Of a DNA stretch of 64,000 nucleotides, positions 3,343 to 52,185 are shown one piece after another. Numbering within the stretch: the first letter of the stretch is position 1; every line of letters begins with the position of its first letter. Where the stretch lies: IMG/VR virus record IMGVR_UViG_3300032236_001850, positions 124,001-188,000 of that record. One strand, 5' to 3'. The notes beneath the pieces are model-generated. The model was not told the origin of the DNA, made no database searches, and was given only the letters and a program-made list of their open reading frames with translations. Both the position numbers and the translations under genes were made by a program.

Positions 3343-3965
3343 AAAAATCCTCTTTTTAATGCCCTTCCTATATGGGAAAAATCCTTTATTCCCGCTTTAT
3401 CCATGATTTTTTTCTTTAAATCCGGACACGGATTCAGAATATAAGTTGATGTTGGTTTGTCCTTAAAGAATTTAATAACCTTCGATTCTGGGATTCTTGT
3501 TATTAAAGATTTTATAAGATCTGGATTTCCACAGTCTATTAGCGGCTCCAAATTTTCGGGATCATCCAGGTATTTTCTATTTGACATATCATAGTCATAA
3601 AGTTCCTTAACTGCAAATTTTTCTATCCCTCTAAATATTGACTCGTAATCGGAAACACTAGACACACTAAATCCCATAATGTATTCCCAATCAAAATCTT
3701 TAAATTCGTAAATACCAATTCTTATCTTATCGTTGGATGTTGGTGTCATCTCTCTCAATTCATACTTCAACACAGTTTCATCCTCACCATGTGGATAAAT
3801 GGTTATCTTAGTTACCTTGCCGTCCTGTTTTTGTTCTGTGTTAATATCCGCCCATTCGGAAATTTTCTTATATGCATCAAGATTTCCCAATGAACCAACA
3901 TAAGGTCTATAAACATTCTCGTTGATTTTTCTTCCGAAAAGATTGAAAGATTTAATTATTCTCAT
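3339..3965 (-). CDS. Hypothetical protein, CTS-like leader plus TGIKD C-terminal module
   Basis: MRIIKSFNLF...; ends KAGIKDFSHIGRALKRGFL; GATATATA at 3970-3977 on minus strand. Confidence 0.85.
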   Translation of the reverse strand: MRIIKSFNLFGRKINENVYRPYVGSLGNLDAYKKISEWADINTEQKQDGKVTKITIYPHGEDETVLKYELREMTPTSNDKIRIGIYEFKDFDWEYIMGFSVSSVSDYESIFRGIEKFAVKELYDYDMSNRKYLDDPENLEPLIDCGNPDLIKSLITRIPESKVIKFFKDKPTSTYILNPCPDLKKKIMDKAGIKDFSHIGRALKRGFL

Positions 3966-3983
3966 CCCTTATATATCCCAAAT

Positions 3984-4069
3984 AAAAAAGGTTGGAGTAG
4001 CGAATTCCAACCTTTACATAGCCGTAACTATTCCGGTCCTAAAATCTGACTTCAGAGAGTCAGCCGGAT
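3984..4069 (-). ncRNA. Candidate structured small RNA (unidentified)
   Basis: AATATATA promoter variant at 4074-4081 (minus); stems UCCGG/CCGGA and CUGACU/AGUCAG, a UACG-loop hairpin, then terminator GGUUGGA/UCCAACC-U6; no ORF. Confidence 0.45.
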
Positions 4070-4137
4070 GTTCTATATATTCTTTGCATCCCAATTTTTA
4101 GGTCGAAATTTGATATATAAACCAAAAACATAATAAA

Positions 4138-4773
4138 ATGAGAAAAGCATGCATCGTGTTATTTCTTTTGGTTTTTGGAGTGATTAATGCTCAAGACACC
4201 ATAAGACTTAAACACACAAACTACACTGCTGTCTACAGCAAGACTTTAAATTACCCAGTACTTGTTGAATGGTGGGAAACCAAAGCAAAGGACGGATGTC
4301 CAAGCCCATTAAAAAGAAAAGATGAATTCAAACCAGATCCGCTTCTACTTAAGGAGACAGATATAGCGAAGGATTATGTTGGATCAGGGTATGACAGGGG
4401 ACATATGTGCCCAGCAGCTTCCAATCTATGTAGTGGTGATAAAGTTCAATCTGAATGCTTCTATTTCAGCAATATGGCACCGCAGCTTCACAGATTAAAT
4501 GCTGGAGATTGGAAAGTATTAGAGATGAAAACAAGAGAGATAGCGATTGCTAATGACAGTGTACATGTTTGGTGTGGTAGCTTGGGAGAGATTAAAAAAG
4601 TTGGTAAGATATCAATACCTAAAACCTGTTGGAAAGTGGTTTACATCAAGAAAACAAAAATCTTTACAGCATACATTTTCAATAATGATGATTCAAAACC
4701 AGACGGAATAGAAAACAATATAGTTCCTCTGGAAGCAGTAGAAAAATTAACAGGATATAAATTTAAAAGGTAA
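4138..4773 (+). CDS. DNA/RNA non-specific endonuclease (NucA/EndA type) with signal peptide
   Basis: YDRGHMCPA motif, FYFSNMAPQ, LNAGDWKVLE; hydrophobic N-terminus ending VINA-QD. Confidence 0.92.
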   Translation: MRKACIVLFLLVFGVINAQDTIRLKHTNYTAVYSKTLNYPVLVEWWETKAKDGCPSPLKRKDEFKPDPLLLKETDIAKDYVGSGYDRGHMCPAASNLCSGDKVQSECFYFSNMAPQLHRLNAGDWKVLEMKTREIAIANDSVHVWCGSLGEIKKVGKISIPKTCWKVVYIKKTKIFTAYIFNNDDSKPDGIENNIVPLEAVEKLTGYKFKR

Positions 4774-4806
4774 AAAAAAGGCTGATATCAATATCAGCCT
4801 TTTTTT
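4773..4806. terminator. Bidirectional intrinsic terminator
   Basis: A7-GGCTGATAT-caa-TATCAGCC-T run between convergent genes. Confidence 0.85.
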
Positions 4807-5569
4807 ATATCATTCCAGATTTTAGTTTTCTACCTATTTTTCCGTAATCTTTTAACCCTGTCCTTTCCAATACTCCAGCCTTAAATTTCTCAAGATTGTC
4901 GATCTTATAGAGTTCCAATGGATTTTTCTTGAAAAAATTATCAATATCCTCAAGAACATCATAATTTATAGGATCGCCGATTTTTAATTTAAGTATGTAC
5001 TCTAGATATTTTCTAATGAAATTGGAATATTCCGGAAGATGTAATTTTTTACTCTCCAAACCAGCATAAGTCATATAAAATCTACCCCCATATTCTCTAA
5101 AAGCTAATAAAATTTGGGATATAATAAGATGAAAAATATAGTTATTATCTCCGCTAACCTCTATTTGTCTCTCCCCAGCTTCATCAGTTCCTATATAATC
5201 AAATTTATTCTCGTCAGATTCGCCAATTACAAATCTTATTTTATAAACATTTGAACCTGATCCAAGACCAGGAGAGCAACTCATTATTTTTTCATTGGGT
5301 TCTGGGTTTAGAGCCTGGGTAAAAGCATAACTTATTGTTCCCCAAAGGAAATATGTATTTAATATAACATCAAGTGTCTTGAGCCCATTTGATTTATAAT
5401 CATAGATATCACCAGCATCATAATTAGGAAAAACATGTAGACCAACAGCTTGAGAGTGATTATTTTTATCCACTCTAAAAGTTATACATTTTTCCAAATA
5501 ATGGTATATTGGAATACGATCAATTGATTCTGATTCAAAAAGTTGATCAAAGGATTTTATTATTTTCAT
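4805..5569 (-). CDS. Hypothetical protein, CTS-like leader plus TGIKD module
   Basis: MKIIKSFDQLFES; ends RTGLKDYGKIGRKLKSGMI. Confidence 0.85.
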   Translation of the reverse strand: MKIIKSFDQLFESESIDRIPIYHYLEKCITFRVDKNNHSQAVGLHVFPNYDAGDIYDYKSNGLKTLDVILNTYFLWGTISYAFTQALNPEPNEKIMSCSPGLGSGSNVYKIRFVIGESDENKFDYIGTDEAGERQIEVSGDNNYIFHLIISQILLAFREYGGRFYMTYAGLESKKLHLPEYSNFIRKYLEYILKLKIGDPINYDVLEDIDNFFKKNPLELYKIDNLEKFKAGVLERTGLKDYGKIGRKLKSGMI

Positions 5570-6684
5570 TATATGAGCCCTCCTCTTAATTTTCTACCGA
5601 TAGCACTAAAATCTTTAATCCCAGTTCTTCTTAAAACACCAGCTTTATATTCTGGATAATCATCAAGTAAATAAAGATCCGTTGGATTTTTTTTCATATG
5701 GTCATCTAGGATTTTTTCAACTTCGGAACTCAAAGATGAACCAAGAAGATAACTTCTAGCAAAATCGGTGAGCAAATTGGATTTTTCATTCATATCTATA
5801 TAGTTTTCACCTATATAAATATTCAAATGTTCGATTTCCGTAGTGATTATCTTCTCTATTTCTTTAACCACCTCATCAATAGTTTTATAACCAAGATAAA
5901 TTTTAATATCTCTCATCTTTTTACTACGACCATGAAGATCAAGGTTTCGATCGACATTTTTGCTTGTTACCTTTTTACCTTCCCCTTTCGGTATAATTCG
6001 GATTTCATTTGCATTGGTACCAATCATGTATTGATTATTGTTTCTTTTTACAGCACCGCTTATTTCCAATATAAAATCAGGGAAAATACGTATGCCAGCT
6101 AAGGCCAAATAACGAAAATTTATCACAATCCCAGCATTTTTACCTTGCATATAAATACCACTAATCGAATTAATATGATCTATCAATTTGGATTTACCCT
6201 TGATTAAAGAGAAATCTGTTATGATGTCGCTTCTTCTTTCTTTTCTGTATACAACATATAAATCGATTGGGAGTTCCCATATCTTGGAAAAGATGAAAGC
6301 ATCATCGTCAACAAGCTCTTTTGCTTCCTTCCTATTGAAATCATTAGGTGCAAACTTATAAACAATATCTCTGATGAAAGTTTGAAGCAGATCCACAAGA
6401 TTCGAAGAGTATTTCATACCGTAATGGCTCCCACTTGAAACAAAGGTAAAGTGCCAATCGCTTCCAGATTTATAAAAGTATGGGCTGCCCGGATTGTTAA
6501 CATAGTCACTGGTGTTTTTGTTTATCAACACATTTATTCTACCGGTTCTTGTTGGGTAAAGTCTATACCATTTTTGAATTTGCTCGAGTTCTCTAGTTCC
6601 TTCGGCTAGTCTGAAGAACTCCTCACAGTCCTCATTCATTTTGGCTGCTTCAAAAAGTTCATTAAAAGTTTTAATTATTCTCAT
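5569..6684 (-). CDS. Hypothetical protein, CTS-like leader plus TGIKD module
   Basis: MRIIKTFNELFEA; ends RTGIKDFSAIGRKLRGGLI; GATATATA at 6689-6696 (minus). Confidence 0.85.
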   Translation of the reverse strand: MRIIKTFNELFEAAKMNEDCEEFFRLAEGTRELEQIQKWYRLYPTRTGRINVLINKNTSDYVNNPGSPYFYKSGSDWHFTFVSSGSHYGMKYSSNLVDLLQTFIRDIVYKFAPNDFNRKEAKELVDDDAFIFSKIWELPIDLYVVYRKERRSDIITDFSLIKGKSKLIDHINSISGIYMQGKNAGIVINFRYLALAGIRIFPDFILEISGAVKRNNNQYMIGTNANEIRIIPKGEGKKVTSKNVDRNLDLHGRSKKMRDIKIYLGYKTIDEVVKEIEKIITTEIEHLNIYIGENYIDMNEKSNLLTDFARSYLLGSSLSSEVEKILDDHMKKNPTDLYLLDDYPEYKAGVLRRTGIKDFSAIGRKLRGGLI

Positions 6685-6694
6685 GAAGTATATA

Positions 6695-6985
6695 TCACTT
6701 CACAGAAATCCAACCCTTACCCAGACAAACCAGATTTATAATGTCACAGTGTTCATCTGGAATATTAACCATTGTGAAGTATGAATGATCATAATCCTTA
6801 TTTGATTCAGCAAAGACACCATATAGATTTCTTCCACTGTAATATCCTGCAAGTTTTCTTCTAATATCCATATCCTCGGAGTTGCCAAAGGAGTATTTCT
6901 GACCACCAATAAATTTGAAGGAGCCCATTATGGAATCATTTAGACAATATTCTTCTCTGTAGATAAAGGATTCACCGGAGCACAT
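6695..6985 (-). CDS. Hypothetical protein, C-terminal WxxVK
   Basis: TAATG coupling to upstream gene; ends GWISVK. Confidence 0.7.
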   Translation of the reverse strand: MCSGESFIYREEYCLNDSIMGSFKFIGGQKYSFGNSEDMDIRRKLAGYYSGRNLYGVFAESNKDYDHSYFTMVNIPDEHCDIINLVCLGKGWISVK

Positions 6986-7245
6986 TATCTGATCTTTATA
7001 AATTCAGGTGCGTTAGCATAAGCCTCCAGAAGTTCATAGATTCTTTGTGACACAATAAGCGAACTCGTTCTCCAAGCATCATCACCGTTGAATCCACCTC
7101 TTATTTTATAAACATGATCCCGACCGTTGCGAACGCGCAACTTCTCAATCTCATAAGTCTCACCATGTTTCATTTCAATTTCACCATCACTGGTTCTGAT
7201 TGGCTTTATATCAAACCAACTCTTATATACAAAACTTTCCATCAT
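6985..7245 (-). CDS. Hypothetical protein, C-terminal FIKIR
   Basis: TAATTTTG promoter at 7250-7257 (minus); ends PEFIKIR. Confidence 0.75.
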   Translation of the reverse strand: MMESFVYKSWFDIKPIRTSDGEIEMKHGETYEIEKLRVRNGRDHVYKIRGGFNGDDAWRTSSLIVSQRIYELLEAYANAPEFIKIR

Positions 7246-7298
7246 GCGACAAAATTAAAAAATGTTTGCGGATAAAAAAAATAATGCACAATAAAAAA

Positions 7299-7876: not shown

Positions 7877-7921
7877 TCCCACGGTGTCCGCACATACACG
7901 ACCGCATTCGATATATAATGT

Positions 7922-8554
7922 ATGAAAATAATAAAGACATTCGAGAGTTTCGAGGAGAAGGAATACACCTTTGATGAACTATCACAAGATGCAAAGAATC
8001 ATGCAATAGAGAACGAGAGAGGTTCATTGTATGACAGTATGGGTGATTGGTGGTACGAAGGAACAATAGAGGATGAAGCACAAAAACTAAGGGATGAGGG
8101 ATTTGAAGATGTTGATATACAATTTTCAGGATTCCACAGTCAAGGTGATGGAGCTTCATTTACTGGCAGAGTATCAGACATTAAACTTTTTGTTAAAGGC
8201 ACTCTCGATATGAAAACCATGAGCGACCAGGTTTTAGATAACATTTACATCTCAGTGGTTAGAACAGACACCAGACACGTTCATGAAAACTCGGTTAGGT
8301 TTGATTGTGAAGTTGACGGTGAGGAAGAAATAGTTTTATTCAGAGCACCAGGTTCAAATCTAGATATAAAAATATCAATTCAGTCTCAGTGTGATAAAAT
8401 AGAAGAAGTCGGAGCACCTTGGGTCAAGAGTAGATGTAAGGAGATATATGAAAAACTCGGTAAGGAGTACGACAGCTACTTTGAAGAGGAACACATAATA
8501 GCAGACATTAAAGCAAACGACTGTAAGTTTGACGAAGACGGAGATTTAATTTAA
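7922..8554 (+). CDS. YTFxELS-family phage protein with CTS-like leader
   Basis: YTFDELSQDAK..., FSGFHSQGDGASF; GATATATA 4 nt upstream; paralogous to 9805..10410. Confidence 0.85.
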   Translation: MKIIKTFESFEEKEYTFDELSQDAKNHAIENERGSLYDSMGDWWYEGTIEDEAQKLRDEGFEDVDIQFSGFHSQGDGASFTGRVSDIKLFVKGTLDMKTMSDQVLDNIYISVVRTDTRHVHENSVRFDCEVDGEEEIVLFRAPGSNLDIKISIQSQCDKIEEVGAPWVKSRCKEIYEKLGKEYDSYFEEEHIIADIKANDCKFDEDGDLI

Positions 8555-8586: not shown

Positions 8587-8634
8587 ATTCCGAAATGATT
8601 TCATATATTTGCAATGATAATTATAATTGTAACT

Positions 8635-9159
8635 ATGAAACACTTTCTGGATAACCTAAACATCTTCCAAGATAGAAACGACGGAAAATTAAAATTGCTA
8701 CCAAAATTAGACGGACTATCTGCTTCTTACACACCATATTCTGAATCATATAAAAGCAGATTACCAGAAATGCTTGCTTCAAGAACGGACAGTCAAATTA
8801 AAAGATTCGAAACGGAAGCAAGAGGTAACCTCGGCAAGGGTCTAAGACCGTACACTCTAGGAAAATACGATGAATTAAACGAGATCGCGGAACCAGATGC
8901 GGAAAAACTAATTGCAAAATATGTTGCTTTAAAACTTAGAAACCCAACTCCGGTTATACTTTGGCATTATCCAAGTATGGTTAAATTAGCTACACCACAT
9001 ATGATTTCAAGGATTGAGAAAATTCTTGAGTATGAAAAAACTAAAGCAGATTTATACCAAGCTATAGAGGATCTTGAGCATAGTCACAAAAGATACCTAG
9101 AAGGAAACGAAAAAACTATAGAATCAGTTCTTAAAAAAGGACACAATCTCATGATATAA
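8635..9159 (+). CDS. Hypothetical protein ending KGHNLMI
   Basis: ATG 8635 after promoter 8604; tail shared with next gene. Confidence 0.8.
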   Translation: MKHFLDNLNIFQDRNDGKLKLLPKLDGLSASYTPYSESYKSRLPEMLASRTDSQIKRFETEARGNLGKGLRPYTLGKYDELNEIAEPDAEKLIAKYVALKLRNPTPVILWHYPSMVKLATPHMISRIEKILEYEKTKADLYQAIEDLEHSHKRYLEGNEKTIESVLKKGHNLMI

Positions 9160-13417: not shown

Positions 13418-13480
13418 TAAATTATTTTTTTATTTGAAAAGGATTTCATATATTTGCAATGTAATTAAAAAACAAATAGA

Positions 13481-15179: not shown

Positions 15180-15287
15180 ATTTATTTGTATTTTGTCTTC
15201 TATATATCAAAAAAATATTCCTTATAATTTTTTTATTTAAAAAGAATTTCATATATTTGCAATGTAAATCAATAAAACAAAATAAAA

Positions 15288-16414: not shown

Positions 16415-16517
16415 ATCTATTTGTATTTTATCATCTATATATCCAAAAAATATATTCAATAATTTTTTTATTTGGAAATGATTTCATATATTTGCAACGT
16501 AATCAATAAACAAAATA

Positions 16518-38216: not shown

Positions 38217-38561
38217 ATGGATAAAACAACTACAGAAAATATTCTAATAGACTATATCAGCCATGATGTATTCAAAAAAAATATGAGACTGGATCACAGT
38301 TCGGGTATAGCCACAACCGTGGAATATATGATTTTAGATATCAGAAACATCCATTGTCATATAGAGGAAATAAAGATAGGTAAATCAAATTTACCAACAT
38401 TGGATAACCGATTTTTTGCTTACATAAAAATTAGAGGTGTGGAAAAAGCTATAATGTCACACTTTTATCCAATGTTCAATGTTTCTAATTTTGTAGCTGA
38501 ACATATAGGCAGGAACTTAATTTGGGTTGATATATACACTACAAATAAACAAATCAAATGA
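38217..38561 (+). CDS. Hypothetical protein
   Basis: 114 aa; LIWVDI near C-terminus. Confidence 0.75.
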   Translation: MDKTTTENILIDYISHDVFKKNMRLDHSSGIATTVEYMILDIRNIHCHIEEIKIGKSNLPTLDNRFFAYIKIRGVEKAIMSHFYPMFNVSNFVAEHIGRNLIWVDIYTTNKQIK

Positions 38562-39009: not shown

Positions 39010-39026
39010 GCCAAGATATATAGTTT

Positions 39027-41208: not shown

Positions 41209-41300
41209 CGATTAACTTTTTTGTATATATATCGGTTAAACAAATCCTCATTTTTATTTTTTTATTTGGAAAGGATTTCTTATATTTGCATATCAAATCA

Positions 41301-44016: not shown

Positions 44017-44018
44017 AC

Positions 44019-44225: not shown

Positions 44226-44268
44226 GAACCCGATTTTGCTAAGATATATAGAGAAAATAAGCAACAAA

Positions 44269-44568
44269 ATGGAAAATATTAAACCTTACGAGTCATTCAA
44301 TTTGGAACCAGAAGAAGTAAACGAAAACTTCTGGACTAAAATGTTTGGCAGACCCACAGTCGATGATGCTGCACATGACTCACTAAGAGGAAAAGGCTTC
44401 AGTCACAGAGGCAAGGACAGCGAGAGATCGGAAGACAACTACATCATGTTTGATGGTAACAAATTCTATCCAGATCAGATTGAGTATGATGATTATCATT
44501 CAACCAAGGAACTTCCAAGAGTAGAGAATGGCAAACTCATCATAGCCAACCCAGCCTGGAGTATGTAA
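44269..44568 (+). CDS. Hypothetical protein with CTS-like leader
   Basis: MENIKPYESFNLE; GATATATA at 44243. Confidence 0.8.
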   Translation: MENIKPYESFNLEPEEVNENFWTKMFGRPTVDDAAHDSLRGKGFSHRGKDSERSEDNYIMFDGNKFYPDQIEYDDYHSTKELPRVENGKLIIANPAWSM

Positions 44569-44581
44569 TCATATCACACAT

Positions 44582-44610
44582 AAAAAATCCACCTTCACGG
44601 TGGATTTTTT
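44582..44610. terminator. Bidirectional intrinsic terminator
   Basis: AAAAATCCACC-ttcac-GGTGGATTTTT. Confidence 0.88.
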
Positions 44611-44677
44611 ATGACATTATCTCTAGGAACTCGGCCAATCCGAGCATATTACTAGGTGATATACGGATGGATTAAAA

Positions 44678-46609
44678 TTAGATAAATCCTCTTTTTAATA
44701 ATTTACCAATCTTTCCGGCGTCCGTTATTCCAGTTCTTTTTATAACACCAGCTTTTACATCAGGATGCGAGTCTAGCATATAAATATCCAATGGCATCTT
44801 TTTAAAATAATCATCCAAAGCAGAGTCACCTATAATCGAATCAAGAAGCGTAAATGTTTCCGGATGTTCCTTAAAAAACTCTATAAATCTACCCACATCC
44901 CATCGACCCTCATTCTGCATAATATATTTTTTACCATTTATATCAAATGAAAAATACTCACCAATCTCATCAGGTAACCCCTTAAGTGATTTCAAATTGT
45001 TACCTGTACAAATAAAATATCCTCCGACCTCCCCCGGTGCTCCTTCTAAGGATTCAAGATTGTTATCATAACATTGGAAGCTTCTACCAACGATTTCAGG
45101 TGCTCCCTCCAGAGTCTTTAATTTGTTTTTTGCACACACAAATGAATTCTGGATTTCCCTAGGTGCTCCCTTCAATGACACAAGTTTGTTATCATTACAA
45201 AAGAAGCCAAAGGAAAATTGAGGTGCTCCCTCCAATGAGGTTAACTCGTTACTGGTACAACTGTATTCACCCTCAACTATCTCCGGACCTCCTTTTAATG
45301 ACTTCAGCTTGTTTTCTTGACACTCAAACCTACCGGCCACCGTTCTAGGTCCTCCCTCCAGTGATTCTAGTTTATTCTTATTGCAAGTGAAATTACCATT
45401 AACAATTTGAGGTGCACCTTCAAGGGTTTTCAAATTGTTGTCTGAACAATCGAAACCATCCACCGTTTGTGGTGAACCTATTAACGATTCTAGATTACTA
45501 TTATTACAAGCTAAACTTTTCACTTTCTCTGGTGCTCCCATCAGGTTTTTTAAATTGTTGTATGAACAATTGAAACCACCATCCACCGTTTGTGGTGCTC
45601 CTTTTAGTGATGTTATATTATTTCTAGAACAGTTGAAATCTCCAGTAACGTGACCAAATTCAATGCCTTGGAAATTTCTTATTCCCCAGTCATTACATCT
45701 AAAAGTTCCTTTTATGTCCACAAGTCCAGTCTCCTCATTTATTTTCCATTCCCCACTAGTGCACTCGTTCAACCATTTAACTTTATTCGATTCCCTTCCA
45801 GTTCCACTAAGATCTTTAATTCCGGTTCTTTTTAGCACACCACTCTTTAAATCGGGAAGGTCGTCTAGTAGATATAAGTCCTCAGGATTCTCAGTGAAAT
45901 GATTGTCAAGTATATTCTCAATTTTTTTACCGTTTACTATTCCAAGATCGGAAAGACATGTCATCACATCCATATCATCTAATTTAATAGCGATACGAAC
46001 AAGGTCAGCAGCAAGATCAGATTTTATCTTAGAATTAAGAACAACCCCAGCTTTAATACCAGGAATTGACAGCAGAAATTCAAGTTGTTTGAATTGTCTA
46101 TAAATTTTGTAAATACCAGAATTTCCAGTAGGAAATCCTCTACTGTCACTGTTTGATGATGTTCTTAATTCTTCCTTAGATAGCTTATCTAGGATTCTTT
46201 TGATCGAAAGATTTAGTCCATAGAATTGTCCATTAAAAACAGCTTCCTTCAATGTAGAATATGAGATCTTTGAAACATATGTCATTTGTGCAATACTATA
46301 CAATATCAACTTTGTCATTGCATCGTTCATCTCCTCTTGTGTGGAGAAAGGCATATCTTTCTCAATTGTAAAACTTCCATAAATCAGGTTGACCTTTCCA
46401 TCACCGGAAGGCTTTAATGAACATGAGTAGGAGGTTCCAAAATTATATTCTCTCACCCCCAGGGAACTACTCTTGGCACCATCTCCCAAAAATTTCCTAG
46501 CCTTCTTATAAATAGGAAGTTTACTCAATGTTTCAAAAGACGGAAACTCCTCCTTGTCCTTTTTGGTTGCGCCTTCAAACAACTCATTAAATGTTTTTAT
46601 TCTTCTCAT
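44678..46609 (-). CDS. Chimeric LRR protein: CTS leader, domain, TGIKD module, 22-aa LRRs, second TGIKD module
   Basis: About 11 repeats of CxxNxLxSLxGAPxxVxGxF; module at ILDNHF...RTGIKD and at the C-terminus. Confidence 0.88.
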   Translation of the reverse strand: MRRIKTFNELFEGATKKDKEEFPSFETLSKLPIYKKARKFLGDGAKSSSLGVREYNFGTSYSCSLKPSGDGKVNLIYGSFTIEKDMPFSTQEEMNDAMTKLILYSIAQMTYVSKISYSTLKEAVFNGQFYGLNLSIKRILDKLSKEELRTSSNSDSRGFPTGNSGIYKIYRQFKQLEFLLSIPGIKAGVVLNSKIKSDLAADLVRIAIKLDDMDVMTCLSDLGIVNGKKIENILDNHFTENPEDLYLLDDLPDLKSGVLKRTGIKDLSGTGRESNKVKWLNECTSGEWKINEETGLVDIKGTFRCNDWGIRNFQGIEFGHVTGDFNCSRNNITSLKGAPQTVDGGFNCSYNNLKNLMGAPEKVKSLACNNSNLESLIGSPQTVDGFDCSDNNLKTLEGAPQIVNGNFTCNKNKLESLEGGPRTVAGRFECQENKLKSLKGGPEIVEGEYSCTSNELTSLEGAPQFSFGFFCNDNKLVSLKGAPREIQNSFVCAKNKLKTLEGAPEIVGRSFQCYDNNLESLEGAPGEVGGYFICTGNNLKSLKGLPDEIGEYFSFDINGKKYIMQNEGRWDVGRFIEFFKEHPETFTLLDSIIGDSALDDYFKKMPLDIYMLDSHPDVKAGVIKRTGITDAGKIGKLLKRGFI

Positions 46610-46744
46610 CCGTTATATATCCAAATTAAATGAAACTACATATACCCATGTGGCAATCACAGACTGAAATACATAGATAAAATAGAATCAAAAGAACCTC
46701 ATTCGAAGTGAACCTGTCTAAAATCCGATACCGATATATACAAA

Positions 46745-47152
46745 ATGAAACACATCAACACATTCTACCAACACATTAACGAATCAAAATCTCAAATAGC
46801 GGAAGCCATAGAGGTTAACGCAGATGAATTTGAATCAGCCGGTTCAAAAGAAGGAAATTTCATGGTTAATTTTCCAAAGGAAGATGTTGAAATTTTGAAG
46901 GATTTGAGTGAATTGATTGGATTTGAATGCGTTTCACAAGTTGGCATATTTCTAATGGTTACTAGAGATCCAAGCACTAGAGAAAAACCATTGGCATATT
47001 TTTCTAAAACCGCTAAATTATACAGAATGGAAATATACCCGAAGGAGCTTACCTGAGATAAATTATACTACTTGGGTGATTCACCAGAATCATTGATGGC
47101 TGTTTTCCTCAGCTATGTTGGATGGAGACCAGAGTGGATTAAAATAAGATAA
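46745..47152 (+). pseudogene. CTS-leader/WIKIR gene interrupted by in-frame TGA (47054-47056)
   Basis: Frame continues after TGA as DKLYYLGDSPESL...PEWIKIR-TAA. Confidence 0.75.
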
Positions 47153-47156
47153 TCAA

Positions 47157-47584
47157 ATGAAACACATACATACATTCTACCAACACATCAACGAATCTCA
47201 ACTCGAAATAGAATCGACCAATCTACCGGATGGGGTAAAAGAGATTGATGAAGAGGAACTTAAAAAATGGGGAAAAAAGCCACACAAATTCTTACCATCG
47301 GGGATGATGAAGCATTTAAACAGTTTAAAAATTGGACTGGAGTGACCAAATCTGAGGATCCCCGGGATTTGCTAGTCCTTAAATCATCATCCACCTCAGA
47401 GGAATATCAATGGTGCTTTGTTCTTTGGACCAAGGAAGAAGATGAGGAGAAAGCAAGACGATTTCTTTCAAGAACACTAGAGGGTGTTTTTGTAACATAC
47501 ATTATCACCTCACCGTCACAAAAAGTTAGAGAGCAGCTAATGCACTACATCAACGATTATGTTAAATGGATCAAAATCAGATAG
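47157..47584 (+). pseudogene. CTS-leader/WIKIR gene split by -1 frameshift at A-AAA-AAG (47273-47279)
   Basis: Leader in frame of 47157; WIKIR in the -1 frame (47267..47584). Confidence 0.75.
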
Positions 47585-47605
47585 ACAAATAAAACATAGA
47601 CAATA

Positions 47606-48046
47606 ATGAAAAACTTAATGATTTTTACTGATTTTTTAAAAGAATCAATTAATTCAGGTGGAATGCCACATCGAAGATATGAAGAAATAACTAAAGATCA
47701 ATGGCGAGAGAAAAAAGAAACACTCCAATGTGTTAGCTTGACAAATGATGAGATAGAGTCAATAGATGAAATATATGAATTTATAAGGGATGTTATATAC
47801 CCAAAAGCAGAAAGAATAAAGTTTTGGGAGTTTTCTCAGAAAGACACTCAATATCTCATCGAAATACGTGATTTAAACATTATGATTACTAAATATTCAC
47901 CATCAATGTGGTTAATTTTTACTAATAGGAATGAGGATGTAGAAGATGAACATTTTTATATTGCAACTTCATTAAAGGAAACAATCGATCTTACAGCATA
48001 TCTTGCGGGTGAATTATTTCATATCGAATGGATCAAAATAAGATAG
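47606..48046 (+). CDS. CTS-leader/WIKIR protein
   Basis: MKNLMIFTDFLKES...IEWIKIR. Confidence 0.85.
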   Translation: MKNLMIFTDFLKESINSGGMPHRRYEEITKDQWREKKETLQCVSLTNDEIESIDEIYEFIRDVIYPKAERIKFWEFSQKDTQYLIEIRDLNIMITKYSPSMWLIFTNRNEDVEDEHFYIATSLKETIDLTAYLAGELFHIEWIKIR

Positions 48047-48050
48047 AAGA

Positions 48051-48683
48051 ATGAAACACATCCATACATTCTCACAACACATCAACGAGAGCTCCTCTCA
48101 GGAGATCATGGACTTCTGCAAGAAGTACAAGATTTCAATTGAACAGTTTAGAGGACAGGAGGAAATCCCAGGTGATTTTAGAAAACTTTCAAATCTAAAA
48201 TCCATTCCTTCAGGTTTCAACCCAAAGGTTGAAGGGAATCTGACTCTTTCCTCGATTTACAGCTTACCTGATGGGTTTTCACCCGTTGTTGGTGGAGATC
48301 TGGAACTGCATGAACTGAATCATTTGCCAGAGGGATTCTCACCCACTGTGGGAAGAGATCTACATCTGAACTATCTAAATCGTATTCCATATGAATTCAC
48401 TGTTAATGTGGGAGACAATCTGATTTTAGATAATGTGTATGAGGTTGGGAAGGGATTCTCACCCACTGTGGGCGGCAATCTGGATCTAGGATCACTCAGA
48501 ATTTATGCGGAAGGATTCTCACCCATCGTGGGCGGGAATCTAATCTTAAATAAAATGGAAAGCATTCCGCTAAAAGGTGTTTCGCTAAAAGGAGTTAAAG
48601 GAAAGATAGAACTTTTTCACAATTACAATCGTGTAAATCTAGAAACCATAGCGGGTGATATAAAATGGATCAAAATAAGATAG
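48051..48683 (+). CDS. CTS-leader/WIKIR protein with 22-aa LRR-like repeats
   Basis: Repeats LxxLPEGFSPxVGGDLxL; DNA repeat ggattctcaccca about every 66 bp. Confidence 0.85.
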   Translation: MKHIHTFSQHINESSSQEIMDFCKKYKISIEQFRGQEEIPGDFRKLSNLKSIPSGFNPKVEGNLTLSSIYSLPDGFSPVVGGDLELHELNHLPEGFSPTVGRDLHLNYLNRIPYEFTVNVGDNLILDNVYEVGKGFSPTVGGNLDLGSLRIYAEGFSPIVGGNLILNKMESIPLKGVSLKGVKGKIELFHNYNRVNLETIAGDIKWIKIR

Positions 48684-48695
48684 GGTATATAGCAC

Positions 48696-49517
48696 ATGAA
48701 AAGAATACTAACATTCCACCAGCTATTTGAAGCAGCCAAACCAAAGGACACATCTTGGATGCCAACCCCCGCGGAGATAAGTCAATTGGAAATTTTTCAA
48801 AATCTGAGAGATGATCATCTTATACGTTTATCCGAACCATACCTCTTAACACAGGGTCAGATAGAAAGGAATGTGAGATCAATAAGTTTTTCAACAGACA
48901 CCAATAACCTTTATAGACTGGAGCCAAATTCAGATGGCACAATCAACATCAAATTTGGAAGAAGCTACATAGCCAAAAATAAGCCTTTCAAAAACCAGGA
49001 GGAAATGACGGATGTTATTATTTACTTAATGATCGTAACAATAGCAATTTATGATCCTGTATGGAGTCGTAAGCCACACAATCCACCCAAAAGAACTCCT
49101 TTCAATGACGATCACGTGAAACTAAATGGGGAATTGGAGAGAGGTGATCTCGAAGGCTTGCTAAACGGCATCACAGAGCTTATGAAATCCAAATTTGGAT
49201 TCTGTGAGGAAAGACTGGTCCAGATTGCGATCATTCTGATGTGGTACATGAAGTCAGCCACACAGGAGGCAAAAAACAACTTCATAAAGCAACTGATCGT
49301 CAATGTGACAGCAGAGAGAATGTTCTTGCATTGGTGCCATCTGCCTAAAATTTTATCTCATCGCCAACCCTTCGTGTCGATGCCTGCAGTTACGGAAGGT
49401 CTCTCCATGGCATTCTCAGATTTTCTTAATAACAATGGGGATGCTCCAATGCCACCAGCTCTGGGGGAGTTCCTTTCCAAGATAACCGATGGGTTCAGAT
49501 GGATTAAAATCAGATAA
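48696..49517 (+). CDS. CTS-leader/WIKIR protein
   Basis: MKRILTFHQLFEA...FRWIKIR; N-terminal part resembles that of 44678..46609. Confidence 0.85.
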   Translation: MKRILTFHQLFEAAKPKDTSWMPTPAEISQLEIFQNLRDDHLIRLSEPYLLTQGQIERNVRSISFSTDTNNLYRLEPNSDGTINIKFGRSYIAKNKPFKNQEEMTDVIIYLMIVTIAIYDPVWSRKPHNPPKRTPFNDDHVKLNGELERGDLEGLLNGITELMKSKFGFCEERLVQIAIILMWYMKSATQEAKNNFIKQLIVNVTAERMFLHWCHLPKILSHRQPFVSMPAVTEGLSMAFSDFLNNNGDAPMPPALGEFLSKITDGFRWIKIR

Positions 49518-49576
49518 CCAGATAAATAAATCATCACTGATTAAAGTGGGATATATAAATAAAATAAAACCAAAAA

Positions 49577-50062
49577 ATGAAACACCTAATCGCCTTTGAG
49601 ATTTTTGAAAATGAGAATATGGAATCTCTAATTCCTAAAATTGCTATTTTTAGCGAGGGTGACTACTATAAACTAAAGGAATATATAAAATCCAATAACA
49701 TAAAGACTGATCTCATTCCCCACCATTTCCCATACGAGGAATATTACAGAGATAATATTAAACGTGGTCAGAGGGGCAATAATTTTTTCTATATCATCAA
49801 CGATAAGGTTATGTTGTACCCAAGTCCAGGATACGATAAAAAATTGAAAAAACTAACAGATAGGGATCTAAATTTTCCTAAATCCCACAGAGCTGCATAC
49901 ATTAAAGATTTCAGAAACATCCCACTAGAGGAACTTTACAACAACTCGGAAGAAATACTTGGGTACTCAATATTCCTACTGGACAAACTTATAACAAAGG
50001 CGAAGCAAATGACAAGAAGCAAATTAACACCATTTGAGGTGACTCTATTCGATAGAGATTAG
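49577..50062 (+). CDS. Hypothetical protein with CTS-like leader
   Basis: MKHLIAFEIFEN; GATATATA at 49550. Confidence 0.82.
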   Translation: MKHLIAFEIFENENMESLIPKIAIFSEGDYYKLKEYIKSNNIKTDLIPHHFPYEEYYRDNIKRGQRGNNFFYIINDKVMLYPSPGYDKKLKKLTDRDLNFPKSHRAAYIKDFRNIPLEELYNNSEEILGYSIFLLDKLITKAKQMTRSKLTPFEVTLFDRD

Positions 50063-50065
50063 CAC

Positions 50066-50521
50066 ATGAAACACATACACACATTTCACCAACACGTCAA
50101 CGAATCCCAATCTCTACCTTCAGGGGTAAGCAAGGTGACAGCCGATGAGTATACAAAACAAAAATGTGTTCCTCTATCCCAGGAGGAAACTGAAAACATC
50201 TTATTCTTAACTAATATAGTGGAACTTGCTTCTTCGACAGATCCACAGAGGAAAAACGCGGATAGCGAGGACAATCAGATCTATCTTTGCGCTGGTTTTT
50301 ATCCTTATGGAGCTATTCCGCCATGGGCATTCTTCGGAAAGTCAAAGTCAGGAATTTACTATCTATCAGCTAATCCCACACGATTAACGGACACAGAAGG
50401 CCAGGAAAGCAACTATTACGCTGCAAACTCATTGCAACCTCTAATTTCAATTGCTCTTGATATGTTCATTAAACTTGGAATGGTTGATACCTCCGGAATC
50501 AGCTGGATCGAAATCAAGTAA
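50066..50521 (+). CDS. CTS-leader protein ending WIEIK
   Basis: MKHIHTFHQHVNES...ISWIEIK. Confidence 0.85.
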   Translation: MKHIHTFHQHVNESQSLPSGVSKVTADEYTKQKCVPLSQEETENILFLTNIVELASSTDPQRKNADSEDNQIYLCAGFYPYGAIPPWAFFGKSKSGIYYLSANPTRLTDTEGQESNYYAANSLQPLISIALDMFIKLGMVDTSGISWIEIK

Positions 50522-50665
50522 ACCTCTAAGGGGCCGGCCACCGGAGATCTAACATCCAACATCATTATAGCACGTTTAAGGGACAATAATCTACAAACCC
50601 ATATCTACATCTTATTAGAGAGATATAAACAAGCTACACTCAAATAAACAACCGCATATAAGCAT

Positions 50666-51028
50666 ATGAAACACATCCTACATATAGACACGTATCAACA
50701 CATGAACGAGTCAATAACAAACCCATCATGGGAGAGAGAAGGCACAAGAGTCACACTGGCAGATATAGAGCCACACCTAGAAGAGGAGTTGCTAATCCAA
50801 CCGGACTCCATAGCACATCTACTCATACCCACAGAGAGGGATCCTAGAAGAGTGGCACAAGCCAATCTGGATCACCCAATCATACTCACAAGAGACAAGG
50901 GCCAGCTCACAAGCATACTAGATGGACAACACAGAGTCACAAAAGCCATAGAGCAAGGCAAGTGGGTAAAGGCAAGACAACTCGATCTAGACACAGTCCC
51001 AGAACACATAGCCAAGGTGCTCAGATAA
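50666..51028 (+). CDS. ParB/Srx N-terminal-like protein with CTS-like leader
   Basis: RVAQANLDHPIIL...ILDGQHRVTKA. Confidence 0.75.
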   Translation: MKHILHIDTYQHMNESITNPSWEREGTRVTLADIEPHLEEELLIQPDSIAHLLIPTERDPRRVAQANLDHPIILTRDKGQLTSILDGQHRVTKAIEQGKWVKARQLDLDTVPEHIAKVLR

Positions 51029-51543
51029 CCCAACTCTCATAGAGGCATTCTAAAGGGACTTAGGAAGCAAACCATATAGAGAGATAGTCAGAATAATATA
51101 ACACAGACACGGCCAGGTAATCGCGTTTAACGACCCCCTTCGGAAGCCCCTCTGCATGTGTGAGTTACCACCCAGGGCTGTCCCAACAAGATTTCCTCGT
51201 CGCCCCGATTTCCCATTTCATTCCACTTCTCTCCACTTTGTTCCACTGGGCAAGAGTTTCCACACAGAAACCCACGTTTTCTTTAGGAAAAACCAAATCT
51301 TTTATATATCCGTGATTTTGGGACGAGGTTCCCTGAACACCCATCACTATCTCGCCCCGAACCATGCCTCTTCCCTACATCTCTCTATGTGGAATGGATC
51401 TCCTGCCTCTCTATTAGAGACGGAACATTCTATGTGGCATTATCTCTCTATGCTCTCTCTATAGGAATGACTACCGGGTTGGCCGGCCCTCACCCCTATC
51501 TTGGCCCCAAATTCCCCCATTGCCGGCAGAGGATATATAGTGT
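51029..51543. other. GC-richer non-coding locus with skew flip and CTCTCTAT repeats (candidate origin/terminus)
   Basis: CTCTCTAT at 51381, 51407, 51444, 51455, inverted copy at 51076; TGGCCGGCCC at 51480 inverted to 50530. Confidence 0.45.
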
Positions 51544-52185
51544 ATGAGACACCTTAAGATTTTTGAAATGAACCCAGCCTTCTACGAGGATCCACCGGAA
51601 CCAAAACGTGAGGGAGCGGATGTGGAGTACCCAGAGCATGAGCAGCTCTTCTCCCCTGTGTTCTGCCATGAGGGGTATCCAGAAGAAGATAAAGTCAGAG
51701 GAGAGAAAGGTTACCCTGACTTTGCCATAGTGATGGACAAGACACCTCAGAAAGCCATATGGGTTGTGAGAGATATTGACGATGTCATTCCCGAGAGCTA
51801 CCTGACCTATTGGGAAACGTCCGAAGGAGGCGAGCATGTCCAAGACACCAACTCCATCCTGAACTTTGCCACTGACGAATTCAAAGCCGGTAGATGGGTG
51901 GATGGCTTTGATGCTTGGGACGAGGATGAATGGGCAGTGGATCTTGTGAAGATCACCACTGTGGAAGATGTGGATTCCCTTATCCAAGATCTCTCCAACT
52001 TCATTAACCCGAGCCACGCCTCCTACTATGGCAAGGTGAGAAATCCCAAGATCAAAGATCACTACAGAATTAGTCACGTTCCAGGTGAGGGCGAGATCTC
52101 TTTGGCGAAGAGAGCAATCAGAGCGCTAGAGATATACAAGAGAAGGATTGAATCAAACACCGTCGGCGGGTCCACACCGGCTTAA
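51544..52185 (+). CDS. Acidic hypothetical protein with CTS-like leader
   Basis: MRHLKIFEM; GATATATA 4 nt upstream. Confidence 0.82.
   Translation: MRHLKIFEMNPAFYEDPPEPKREGADVEYPEHEQLFSPVFCHEGYPEEDKVRGEKGYPDFAIVMDKTPQKAIWVVRDIDDVIPESYLTYWETSEGGEHVQDTNSILNFATDEFKAGRWVDGFDAWDEDEWAVDLVKITTVEDVDSLIQDLSNFINPSHASYYGKVRNPKIKDHYRISHVPGEGEISLAKRAIRALEIYKRRIESNTVGGSTPA

What the first reader, a model, noticed from the sequence alone, without database searches (positions are those of the whole stretch)
3965..51544. GATATATA lies exactly 4 nt before the ATG in eight genes: probable leaderless late mRNAs
Seen: 4-nt gap for starts 3965, 6684, 46609 (minus) and 7922, 39027, 46745, 48696 (GGTATATA), 51544 (plus); variant GCATATAA-gcat-ATG at 50666. 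Inference: if the octamer is a -10 element, transcription starts at or next to the A of ATG. Other copies have 17-26 nt A-rich leaders, giving two translational classes.
Basis: partly seen in the sequence, partly recalled or inferred. Interest (0 to 1): 0.6.

Follow-up and report, generated by a model that had tools for sequence, protein, structure and literature searches.

The report
Late promoter fused to start codons
In a 434-kb phage that probably infects Bacteroidota, the octamer GATATATA marks the late-gene promoters. About one in five of them sits exactly 4 bases before the ATG, so those late mRNAs should begin at the start codon itself (leaderless), which sequence statistics support but no RNA data yet confirm.

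Summary
All nine sites exist: seven exact GATATATA-N4-ATG, one GGTATATA and one poor variant.

Evidence that GATATATA is the late promoter:
- The genome (434,509 bp, terminal repeats, 35% GC, no Shine-Dalgarno use) has 92 exact octamers, and 71% lie just upstream of genes. Most one-mismatch variants reach 5% or less.
- It precedes the portal, prohead protease plus major head protein, tail sheath, neck and fibre-like genes.
- The phage encodes a gp55-like late sigma factor, and no RNA polymerase gene was detected.

Evidence that the 4-nt class is leaderless:
- Motif-to-ATG spacing is bimodal: 4 nt (15 cases) or 13-29 nt, and never 7-12.
- In the long class, the 5th base after the motif is A in 83% of cases. 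ATG triplets are about 20-fold depleted from that base onward but not in the 4-nt spacer.
- The phage's host-type TAnnTTTG promoters show the same two spacings. In flavobacteria that box lies at -12 to -5.
- The pattern recurs in five related complete genomes. Orthologues at 30-72% identity keep a 4-6 nt gap while the spacer differs.

No RNA data exist, so the start sites remain unproven.

Also seen: 56 mostly late proteins share an N-terminal tag that resembles the T4 capsid-targeting sequence.

The parts
3970..3977 (-). Late promoter octamer GATATATA, 4 nt before the ATG at 3965 (gene 3339-3965, 208 aa, N-terminal MRIIKSF tag). Predicted leaderless.
   Evidence: divergent neighbour, 172-bp intergenic region; the G001 orthologue keeps the motif and gap with a changed spacer
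6689..6696 (-). Late promoter octamer, 4 nt before the ATG at 6684 (gene 5569-6684, 371 aa, tagged). Predicted leaderless.
   Evidence: the G2 orthologue (30% identity) has GATATATA-catc-ATG
7910..7917 (+). Late promoter octamer, 4 nt before the ATG at 7922 (gene 7922-8554, 210 aa, phrog_5162, tagged). Predicted leaderless.
   Evidence: the G3 orthologue (38% identity) has a gap of 5
39015..39022 (+). Late promoter octamer, 4 nt before the ATG at 39027 (gene 39027-39512, 161 aa). Predicted leaderless.
   Evidence: G001 keeps the motif and gap with spacer gctt instead of gttt
46614..46621 (-). Late promoter octamer, 4 nt before the ATG at 46609 (gene 44678-46609, 643 aa, phrog_7816, tagged). 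It stands back to back with the next promoter in a 135-bp divergent intergenic region.
46733..46740 (+). Late promoter octamer, 4 nt before the ATG at 46745 (gene 46745-47056, 103 aa, tagged). Divergent partner of the previous part.
51532..51539 (+). Late promoter octamer, 4 nt before the ATG at 51544 (gene 51544-52185, 213 aa, tagged). Predicted leaderless.
   Evidence: G001 keeps the motif and gap although the upstream flank is unrelated
48684..48691 (+). GGTATATA, a one-mismatch variant, 4 nt before the ATG at 48696 (gene 48696-49517, 273 aa). Possibly a weaker late promoter.
   Evidence: 2 of the 10 GGTATATA copies genome-wide lie in promoter position
50654..50661 (+). GCATATAA-gcat-ATG before gene 50666-51028. 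It matches the octamer poorly and is not supported as a promoter.
   Evidence: 28 copies genome-wide; single substitutions at internal positions already abolish placement upstream of genes
4112..4119 (+). Late promoter octamer with an 18-nt gap to the ATG at 4138 (leadered class).
15201..15208 (-). Late promoter octamer with a 21-nt gap to the ATG at 15179 (leadered class, tagged gene).
16436..16443 (-). Late promoter octamer with a 21-nt gap to the ATG at 16414 (leadered class, tagged gene).
38529..38536 (+). Late promoter octamer with a 21-nt gap to the ATG at 38558 (leadered class, tagged gene).
41226..41233 (-). Late promoter octamer with a 17-nt gap to the ATG at 41208 (leadered class, tagged gene).
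44243..44250 (+). Late promoter octamer with an 18-nt gap to the ATG at 44269 (leadered class, tagged gene).
49550..49557 (+). Late promoter octamer with a 19-nt gap to the ATG at 49577 (leadered class, tagged gene).
52981..52988 (+). Late promoter octamer with a 17-nt gap to the ATG at 53006 (leadered class, tagged gene).
7250..7257 (-). Host-type (Bacteroidota sigma-A) -7 box TAATTTTG, 4 nt before the ATG at 7245 (gene 6985-7245). It shows the same leaderless geometry on an early-type promoter and serves as an internal calibration.
   Evidence: box position from PMC9723704 and PMC6847099

Best explanation
GATATATA is the single recognition element of this phage's late promoters. It occupies about -12 to -5 and is read by the host's RNA polymerase core carrying a phage-encoded gp55-like late sigma factor. 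Transcription starts at the 5th base after the octamer, which is almost always an A.

In about 80% of late promoters, that A opens a short (9-25 nt), A-rich leader with no Shine-Dalgarno sequence, the type Bacteroidota ribosomes use. In about 20% (15 sites in the genome, 7-8 in this window), the A is the first base of the ATG. Those mRNAs begin with a 5'-terminal AUG and must be translated by the leaderless route.

What is shown:
- motif specificity, position and conservation
- association with structural genes
- the bimodal spacing
- presence of the gp55-like sigma

What is inferred:
- the exact transcription start
- which sigma reads the motif
- that the leaderless mRNAs are translated as such
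For: 1. Specificity. Of 92 exact octamers, 71% lie at gap 4 or 13-29 upstream of a called gene in the sense orientation. Internal one-mismatch variants reach 0-5% (one, GATAGATA, 14%). Only position 1 tolerates change.

2. Late genes. The motif heads the two portal paralogues, the S77 protease plus major head protein operon, the tail sheath, and the T4-neck-like and fibre-like genes.

3. Machinery.
- A gp55-family sigma is present: phrog_234 E = 1e-15, and its only PDB match is T4 gp55, 7d7c_F.
- No RNA polymerase genes were detected.
- There is no conserved -35 element, only a T-rich tract.
- The octamer is identical to the T4 late consensus TATAAATA at 6 of 8 positions (consensus from PMC1524935).

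4. Proxies for +1.
- In 52 long-class promoters, the 5th base after the motif is A in 43 and the 4th in 24 (p = 2e-4). G2 and G3 replicate this.
- Across three genomes, ATG occurs 9 times in 532 spacer positions but 2 times in 2361 leader positions from offset 4 onward (p = 9e-6).

5. Calibration.
- About 58 host-type TAnnTTTG promoters in the same genome have gaps of 12-30, 4 have a gap of 4, and none have gaps of 6-11.
- That box is mapped at -12 to -5, with the start site 4-5 nt downstream, in Flavobacterium (PMC9723704, PMC6847099).
- 5.5% of F. psychrophilum mRNAs are leaderless (PMC9723704).

6. Start codon.
- No gap-4 gene has an in-frame upstream start codon.
- In 11 of 14, the in-frame stop (TAA or TAG) is formed by the end of the motif.
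- Ten of 14 begin with the same N-terminal peptide as leadered paralogues, aligned on the Met.

7. Context. Seven of 14 have a divergent upstream neighbour and an intergenic region of 26-172 bp.

8. Conservation.
- Five related complete genomes carry 13, 12, 8, 3 and 4 copies of the 15-mer, against 0-1 for the control.
- G2 and G3 (about 71% nt identity over the alignable 40-50%) show the same bimodal histogram with nothing at gaps 8-12.
- Orthologues at 30-72% aa identity keep a gap of 4-6 with different spacers.
- The motif is kept at three orthologous promoters in 58 of 80 related loci while the flanks diverge. The other loci are mostly cut short at a contig end.
Against: - No transcript 5' ends exist. 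All sequencing runs that hold this DNA are DNA runs.
- In T4 the late element lies at -13 to -6 (PMC1524935). With that geometry, +1 would fall on the U of AUG.
- The co-activator gp33 and the sliding clamp gp45, both essential for T4 late transcription, were not detected with PHROG profiles.
- The gp55-like protein has only 119 aa and lacks the C-terminal third of T4 gp55.
- Two other sigma-70-family genes exist and could read the motif instead.
- Seven gap-4 genes follow a co-directional gene closely, so read-through transcripts may also carry them.
- Ten of the 14 belong to one N-terminal family, so they are not fully independent.
- Gene starts come from my own simple ORF caller.
Confidence: 0.72

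Rival explanations
1. GATATATA is a real late promoter, but the mRNAs that actually feed translation of the gap-4 genes are mostly longer transcripts from upstream promoters. In those transcripts the octamer and spacer simply serve as an AT-rich translation initiation region. Leaderless transcripts would be minor or poorly translated.
For: Seven of 14 gap-4 genes lie 10-148 bp (one at 515 bp) behind a co-directional gene. Bacteroidota initiation needs only A/U-rich unstructured upstream sequence (PMC6847099). Leaderless mRNAs are a minority class in flavobacteria, at 5.5% (PMC9723704).
Against: The other seven have divergent neighbours and intergenic regions as short as 26 bp, which leaves no room for another promoter plus leader. 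The exact 4-nt spacing and the empty 7-12 nt zone are conserved across diverged genomes, and read-through gives no reason to preserve them.
Confidence: 0.12
2. The octamer is transcribed and acts at the RNA level, as a translation enhancer, an RNA-binding-protein site or a processing site. The true promoters lie further upstream.
For: It is always close to start codons. The genome lacks Shine-Dalgarno sequences, so some other initiation signal might exist.
Against: - The distance to the ATG is either 4 or anywhere from 13 to 29 nt, which is not the fixed geometry of a ribosome-binding element.
- ATG avoidance and the A-rich tract start 4 nt after the motif, not before it.
- Only about 11% of genes carry it, and these are enriched for structural and late genes.
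- Host-type promoters with known geometry show the identical spacing distribution.
- Several copies follow terminator hairpins directly.
Confidence: 0.07
3. The 4-nt spacing is a historical accident. A cassette of promoter + ATG + conserved N-terminal coding sequence was duplicated many times, so the 'eight genes' represent one event that was inherited rather than selected.
For: Ten of 14 gap-4 genes carry the same N-terminal signature, and many cluster in the hypervariable window region.
Against: - Spacers and upstream flanks differ at every site.
- At least two gap-4 genes clearly lack the signature, the FMN-reductase-like and UVR-motif genes. The SLT-domain gene carries the signature one residue further in (MLKHIK), so the ATG rather than the tag keeps the 4-nt gap.
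- Family members with 17-25 nt gaps are more numerous.
- Orthologues at 30-72% identity retain the gap.
- Four host-type promoters show the same fusion independently.
Confidence: 0.05

Closest known systems
Phage T4 late promoters (TATAAATA, read by gp55 with gp33 and the gp45 clamp)
   Same: - A single 8-bp AT-rich element with no -35 box.
- It precedes head, neck and tail genes.
- A gp55-family sigma is encoded by the phage.
- 6 of 8 bases are identical.
- Position 1 is the least constrained position, as reported for T4 relatives (PMC1524935).
   Different: - The sequence is GATATATA.
- The inferred position is -12 to -5 rather than -13 to -6.
- No gp33 or gp45 homologue was detected.
- The sigma is truncated to 119 aa.
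- From my own knowledge, T4 late genes have Shine-Dalgarno leaders, whereas here a fifth of late promoters abut the ATG.
Bacteroidota sigma-A promoters (-7 box TAnnTTTG at -12 to -5)
   Same: Both are 8-bp elements ending 4 nt before +1. The same phage uses about 60 such promoters, with the same bimodal box-to-ATG spacing, including 4 fused to an ATG (PMC9723704, PMC6847099).
   Different: GATATATA lacks the TTTG core and the upstream ATTTTTTTAT...CGAA element of the phage's host-type promoters. It also heads a different, structural set of genes.
Known leaderless phage mRNAs, such as lambda cI from P_RM (my own knowledge), and leaderless mRNAs of flavobacteria (5.5% of mRNAs; PMC9723704)
   Same: The promoter is placed so that +1 is the A of AUG. 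The start codon is strictly AUG.
   Different: Here it is a systematic class making up about 20% of one temporal promoter type. It is conserved across a clade of huge phages rather than confined to a single regulatory gene. By contrast, phiKZ showed no leaderless transcripts (PMC8244752), and all mapped 5' UTRs of AR9 are 26 nt or longer (PMC5312081).
T4 internal proteins with a capsid-targeting sequence (IpII and IpIII begin MKTYQEFIAEA; IpI begins MKTFKEF)
   Same: Many of the late and leaderless genes here begin with M-K/R-x-I/L-K-x-F-x-x-F-x-N-E-S/A. This is a similar short N-terminal peptide ending in a hydrophobic-x-Glu motif. A T4 gp21-family (S77) prohead protease is encoded.
   Different: - It is far more numerous: 56 proteins, 9% of the gene set.
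- No significant sequence match to the T4 peptides was found.
- Cleavage and packaging are untested.

Membership tests
T4-type (gp55-dependent) late promoter system | The phage encodes a gp55-family late sigma factor | tested here: met
   phrog_234 E = 9.6e-16 at G000 281671-281943. The ORF has 119 aa. Its only PDB match is T4 gp55 7d7c_F, E = 2.5e-4.
T4-type (gp55-dependent) late promoter system | The promoter is a single, highly conserved 8-bp AT-rich element in the -10 region, with no -35 element | tested here: met
   The exact octamer is required: 71% of exact copies are in promoter position, against 5% or less for most variants. No upstream position is conserved apart from a T-rich tract.
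T4-type (gp55-dependent) late promoter system | Consensus TATAAATA at -13 to -6 | tested here: not met
   The sequence is GATATATA (6 of 8 identical). The inferred position is -12 to -5. T4 values are from PMC1524935.
T4-type (gp55-dependent) late promoter system | Heads virion structural (late) genes | tested here: met
   Portal, S77 protease plus major head protein, sheath, neck-like and fibre-like genes.
T4-type (gp55-dependent) late promoter system | gp33 co-activator and gp45 sliding clamp present | tested here: inconclusive
   phrog_254 and phrog_223 found nothing at E <= 1. Small, divergent homologues could be missed.
Leaderless mRNA | Transcript 5' end at, or within a few nt of, the A of the start codon | not testable with these tools
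   No RNA run holds the sequence. The proxies agree: an A peak and the onset of ATG avoidance at the 5th base after the motif, and the host-type promoter geometry (PMC9723704).
Leaderless mRNA | The start codon is AUG and is the first possible start of the ORF | tested here: met
   All gap-4 starts are ATG. None has an in-frame upstream ATG, GTG or TTG. In 11 of 14, an in-frame stop lies two codons upstream.
Bacteroidota sigma-A promoter | -7 box TAnnTTTG | tested here: not met
   GATATATA has no TTTG core. TAnnTTTG promoters form a separate class of about 60 copies in the same genome.
T4-like capsid-targeting / prohead-protease propeptide (for the N-terminal tag seen in passing) | A short peptide at the extreme N-terminus ending in hydrophobic-x-Glu, a gp21-family protease encoded, and cleavage and packaging demonstrated | tested here: inconclusive
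   The tag is N-terminal only: 56 hits at N-termini against 0 in internal control windows. Peptidase_S77 scores 34.6 bits against a cut-off of 27. T4 internal protein N-termini were read from the record. Cleavage and packaging cannot be tested here.

The most novel reading that the evidence does not exclude
In this clade of huge Bacteroidota phages, the late promoter, a 5'-terminal AUG and a conserved N-terminal propeptide (M-K-x-I-K-x-F-x-x-F-x-N-E) form a portable 'express late, translate without a leader, load into the capsid' cassette. The cassette has been spread over about 50 fast-evolving genes. Leaderless translation would give these cargo or ejected proteins a translational regime of their own late in infection, separate from the leadered structural genes.
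Probability: 0.25. Interest if true: 0.7.

Novelty: new variant of a known kind. Interest (0 to 1): 0.5.

Why it matters
- Promoter grammar. It gives a huge uncultured phage clade (relatives of 290-430 kb) a concrete and testable promoter grammar. Host-type TAnnTTTG promoters drive early genes, and a gp55-type GATATATA element drives late genes.
- Annotation. That grammar allows temporal classes and true start codons to be annotated from sequence alone in genomes where 80-90% of genes have no known function.
- Leaderless translation. A fifth of late transcription units are predicted to be leaderless in a phylum that already initiates translation without Shine-Dalgarno pairing. This offers a natural system for asking how Bacteroidota ribosomes handle 5'-terminal AUGs, and whether a phage exploits this for temporal or class-specific control.
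- Candidate cargo proteins. The link to a large family with a capsid-targeting-like tag points to a big, fast-evolving set of candidate packaged or ejected proteins.

Tried and rejected
- RNA evidence. One search for sequencing runs found ten holders, all DNA: pond, viral and unspecified metagenomes. I did not use read laying because DNA contigs cannot show transcript ends.
- Close cultured relatives. Megablast of 8 kb against the phage collection found nothing.
- Relatives of the 643-aa gap-4 protein. None were found in viral contigs from a single-sequence query.
- Phage RNA polymerases. Neither multisubunit (PF00562, PF04997) nor T7-like (PF00940) polymerases were found. The PF00940 control rang in no control genome, so that negative is weak.
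- gp33 and gp45. Not found.
- Phage ribosomal protein bS21, as a possible link to late translation. Not found.
- Orthologues in the nearest relative G001. I looked for the genes at window 46745, 48696, 50666 and 46609. No clear orthologues appeared, because the region is hypervariable, so the GGTATATA and GCATATAA variants could not be checked by comparison.
- Distant relatives (LR756500-02 and Lak-A1). The exact 15-mer is at background level. The portal gene is preceded by AATATATA in LR756502 and TATATATA in LR756501, 21-22 nt upstream. The core may therefore be wider than the G-initial form, but I did not test this statistically.
- Literature. No paper in the held library mentions GATATATA as a phage promoter.
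- One family scan failed on a bad coordinate reference of mine and was repeated.


Full report
**What the window is.** The window is bases 124,001-188,000 of a 434,509-bp IMG/VR virus record with direct terminal repeats, rated complete. It has 35% GC and no Ns.
- My ORF-based gene call gives 610 genes covering 91% of the genome, 540 of them on one strand.
- Upstream of the start codons there is no Shine-Dalgarno signal. GGAGG occurs in 4 of 609 upstream regions. Instead there is an adenine peak at -11 to -13 and at -3. This pattern is described for Bacteroidota (PMC6847099).
- TAnnTTTG, the Bacteroidota sigma-A -7 box, is strongly enriched 12-30 nt upstream of gene starts, in the sense orientation only.
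- The best portal and gp55-like matches among public phages are the 462-735 kb 'uncultured phage' records LR756500-04 and the Prevotella Lak phages. The 634-735 kb genomes and the Lak phages are placed in the Bacteroidetes-infecting 'Mahaphage' clade (PMC7162821).
- The DNA is held by pond, viral and unspecified metagenome runs.

I therefore take the host to be a freshwater member of the Bacteroidota. This is an inference.

**Check of the observation.**
- The window has 19 exact octamers against 4.6 expected. The genome has 92.
- The distance from the octamer to the next ATG is sharply bimodal. Fifteen copies have a gap of exactly 4, and 14 of these open ORFs of 60 aa or more. One copy each has a gap of 5 and 6, none has 7-12, and about 52 have 13-29.
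- Among about 880 one-mismatch copies, only 3 have a gene start at gap 4. Taking a background rate of 0.4%, the excess has a binomial p of about 3e-18.
- GGTATATA (48684-48691) is a tolerable position-2 variant.
- GCATATAA (50654-50661) matches the octamer poorly and has no support.

**The octamer is a promoter, and a late one.**
- The exact octamer lies in a gene-upstream position in 71% of copies. Internal single substitutions reach 0-5% (one, GATAGATA, 14%), and only position 1 is relaxed: AATATATA 21%, TATATATA 40%.
- Nothing upstream of it is conserved except a T-rich tract. Several copies directly follow hairpin-plus-T-run terminators.
- It precedes two tandem portal paralogues (phrog_213) and the prohead protease (Peptidase_S77, 34.6 bits, above the cut-off). 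The major head protein gene (phrog_138) follows the protease directly.
- It also precedes the tail sheath, a T4-neck-like protein and a fibre-like protein.
- The phage encodes a gp55-family sigma: phrog_234 E = 1e-15, and its only PDB match is T4 gp55 in 7d7c.
- Two further sigma-70-family proteins are encoded. One of them sits behind a host-type promoter.
- No multisubunit or T7-like RNA polymerase was detected.
- GATATATA shares 6 of 8 bases with the T4 late element TATAAATA. The literature on T4 relatives also reports a poorly conserved first position (PMC1524935).
- gp33 and gp45 homologues were not detected. The sigma has only 119 aa, aligned to residues 10-113 of the 185-aa T4 protein.

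The system therefore works like the T4 late system, but I do not file it as a full member.

**Where transcription starts.** No RNA data could be found, so I used four sequence proxies.
1. *A peak.* In the 52 long-gap promoters, the first four bases after the octamer are unconstrained (A 35-50%). The fifth is A in 43 of 52, and an A-rich run starts there. The fifth-versus-fourth comparison gives Fisher p = 2e-4. Two relatives that share only about 71% nucleotide identity over the alignable 40-50% of their genomes show the same jump.
2. *ATG avoidance.* Bacteroidota avoid AUG triplets in initiation regions (PMC6847099). Across 133 long-gap promoters of three genomes, ATG occurs 9 times in the 532 positions of the 4-nt spacer, which is roughly the chance level. 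It occurs only twice in the 2361 positions from offset 4 to the start codon (p = 9e-6). The spacer behaves as untranscribed sequence and everything after it as mRNA.
3. *Internal calibration.* The phage's own host-type promoters have the consensus ATTTTTTTAT..CGAA..N..TATATTTG. About 58 of them have gaps of 12-30, four have a gap of exactly 4, and none have 6-11. In Flavobacterium this box is mapped at -12 to -5, and probable promoters have 4 or 5 nt between the box and the start site (PMC9723704; PMC6847099, Figure 1 legend).
4. *Gene context.* Seven of the 14 short-gap genes have a divergent upstream neighbour, with intergenic regions of 26, 54, 67, 69, 135, 135 and 172 bp. The only conserved element in those regions is the octamer.

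All four proxies put +1 on the fifth base after the octamer. In the gap-4 class that base is the A of ATG.

**The ATG is the real start codon.**
- None of the gap-4 ORFs has an in-frame ATG, GTG or TTG upstream. In 11 of 14, the last two bases of the motif plus the first spacer base form an in-frame TAA or TAG.
- Ten of the 14 begin with the same N-terminal peptide as many leadered paralogues, aligned on the initiator Met.
- In the SLT-domain gene (G000 29892), the peptide sits one residue further in (MLKHIK...), yet the ATG still lies 4 nt from the motif. The spacing therefore tracks the ATG and not the protein.

**Conservation.**
- A gp55-like query retrieved 80 related loci at 81-98% identity. 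Of these, 58 keep the octamer at the same three orthologous promoters while the flanks diverge; the others are mostly cut short at a contig end.
- Five related complete genomes of 290-430 kb contain 13, 12, 8, 3 and 4 copies of GATATATA-N4-ATG, against 0-1 for the backwards control.
- Full histograms for G2 and G3 reproduce the bimodality. G2 has 11 copies at gap 4. G3 has 8 at gap 4 and 6 at gap 5. Both have nothing at gaps 8-12.
- Orthologues of six G000 short-gap genes, at 30-72% amino-acid identity, keep a gap of 4-6 with different spacer bases. One has AATATATA instead.
- The nearest relative, G001, keeps the motif and gap at window 3965, 6684, 7922, 39027 and 51544, in one case with an unrelated upstream flank.

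**Mechanism proposed.** Host RNA polymerase core with the phage's gp55-like sigma recognises GATATATA at -12 to -5 and starts at the A five bases downstream.
- About four fifths of late units then carry a 9-25 nt A-rich leader.
- About one fifth start with AUG and must use the leaderless route, in which the ribosome binds a 5'-terminal AUG directly.
- The empty 7-12 nt zone fits the established finding that very short leaders serve neither route well. That point rests on my own knowledge.
- Leaderless mRNAs exist in the host phylum, at 5.5% in F. psychrophilum (PMC9723704).
- The share here is higher for late promoters (14 of 66) than for host-type promoters (5 of 63), but the difference is only marginal (p = 0.046).

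**Rivals.**
- Read-through transcripts may also carry the seven gap-4 genes that follow a co-directional gene. This cannot be excluded, and it would lessen the importance of the leaderless form.
- An RNA-level role for the octamer is unlikely, given the variable distance to the ATG and the onset of ATG avoidance after the spacer.
- Simple inheritance of a duplicated cassette is unlikely, given the genes without the family signature, the variable spacers, the conservation in orthologues, and the four host-type promoters with the same fusion.

**Comparison and novelty.**
- T4-type late promoters, Bacteroidota -7 promoter geometry and leaderless phage mRNAs are each known.
- I found no description of this element or of a systematic leaderless late class in the held literature.
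- phiKZ showed no leaderless transcripts, and all mapped AR9 5' UTRs are 26 nt or longer (PMC8244752, PMC5312081).

I rate this a new variant of a known kind, of moderate interest.

**Seen in passing: the N-terminal tag.**
- A short HMM built from the N-termini finds 56 of 610 proteins with a tag whose consensus is MKNIKTFESFINES. It finds none in internal control windows.
- The tag is carried by 28 of 66 genes with the late motif, against 28 of 543 others (odds ratio 13.6, p = 2e-15). Nineteen of those 28 others lie in tight co-directional runs behind a motif gene.
- It also occurs in G2 (21 proteins) and G3 (26 proteins).
- It resembles the capsid-targeting peptides of the T4 internal proteins, read from the T4 record as MKTYQEFIAEA and MKTFKEF. 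It ends in a hydrophobic-x-Glu motif of the kind cleaved by gp21-family proteases, which is my own knowledge. Such a protease is encoded.

This is a hypothesis only.

Noticed in passing
Genome-wide. In the window, for example, genes 2075-2779(-), 2782-3342(-), 3339-3965(-), 4805-5569(-), 5569-6684(-), 7922-8554(+), 14358-15179(-), 38558-38878(+), 44678-46609(-), 46745-47056(+), 47606-50521(+), 51544-52185(+) and 53006-53380(+): 56 of 610 predicted proteins begin with a shared tag, M-K/R/N/E-x-I/L-K-x-F-x-x-F-x-N-E-S/A, found at N-termini only. It is strongly tied to late promoters (OR 13.6) and resembles the capsid-targeting peptides of the T4 internal proteins. A T4 gp21-family (S77) protease is encoded. 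These may be a large set of capsid-packaged or ejected proteins.
   Followed up: partly
Genome-wide. In the window, for example, boxes at 13449, 15252, 16487, 18246, 19988, 22913, 24329, 27574, 29914, 31410, 33121, 33838 and 35155 (+): There are about 60 host-type promoters with a very strong extended consensus: ATTTTTTTAT..CGAA..(about 10 nt)..TATATTTG-CA. They lie 12-30 nt before start codons. They precede, for example, a DnaB/Sak4-like ATPase gene (24365-25378) and a 300-aa sigma-70-like gene (G000 204386-205288). This is presumably the early class.
   Followed up: partly
Window 57692, 59891, 61410, 62440 and 63122 (+), continuing at G000 189090-192364: A sub-class of about 9-10 TATATTTG promoters replaces the upstream ATTTTTTTAT element with (C)TTTAACG-N7-ATCGTTG. 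All have nearly identical leaders (cttagtaattaaaa...). This may be a separately regulated (middle?) class or an operator for a phage regulator.
   Followed up: no
G000 197280-197312 (L016 9280-9312): Here GATATATA-N4-ATG opens only a 5-codon ORF (MKTIK-stop). It is followed 3 nt later by the ATG of a tagged gene (197313-197876). This is either a predicted leaderless mini-ORF ahead of a late gene or a decayed start.
   Followed up: no
G000 281665-282024 (L030 1495-1854): The gp55-like sigma has only 119 aa, aligned to residues 10-113 of the 185-aa T4 gp55, so the C-terminal third is absent. No gp33 or gp45 homologue was detected. Its own gene has neither promoter type upstream and follows a terminator-like hairpin.
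   Followed up: partly
G000 282552-284186 and 284191-285843 (L021 552-2186 and 2191-3843): Two tandem portal-protein paralogues (both phrog_213, E = 3.5e-55 and 5.1e-68) lie behind one late promoter.
   Followed up: no
G000 296799-298763 (L021 14799-16763): The prohead protease is a 654-aa protein. The S77/S80 protease domain lies within about the first 230 residues, followed by a long, unexplained C-terminal extension. The major head protein gene follows directly.
   Followed up: no
G000 107879-126062 (L015 1380-19563; the last gene runs into window 1-2062): A run of five very large genes (871-1704 aa). The first has DUF5122 beta-propeller repeats plus collagen triple-helix repeats, and the second has collagen repeats. 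The fifth (ending at window 2062) has a late promoter 24 nt upstream. These are probably fibres or a decoration apparatus.
   Followed up: no
Window about 44000-51000, compared with G001 140000-160000 (L183): Between this phage and its nearest relative (gp55-like 98% identical), the genes at 46745, 48696, 50666 and most of 44678-46609 have no clear counterpart. Flanking late genes are 78-85% identical. This is a hypervariable island of tagged late genes.
   Followed up: partly
Window 8604-8611 (+): A host-type box TATATTTG lies only 2 nt before the ATG at 8614 (gene 8614-9159). With the usual geometry, +1 would fall inside the ATG, so either the true start codon is further downstream or this promoter starts unusually close.
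   Followed up: no
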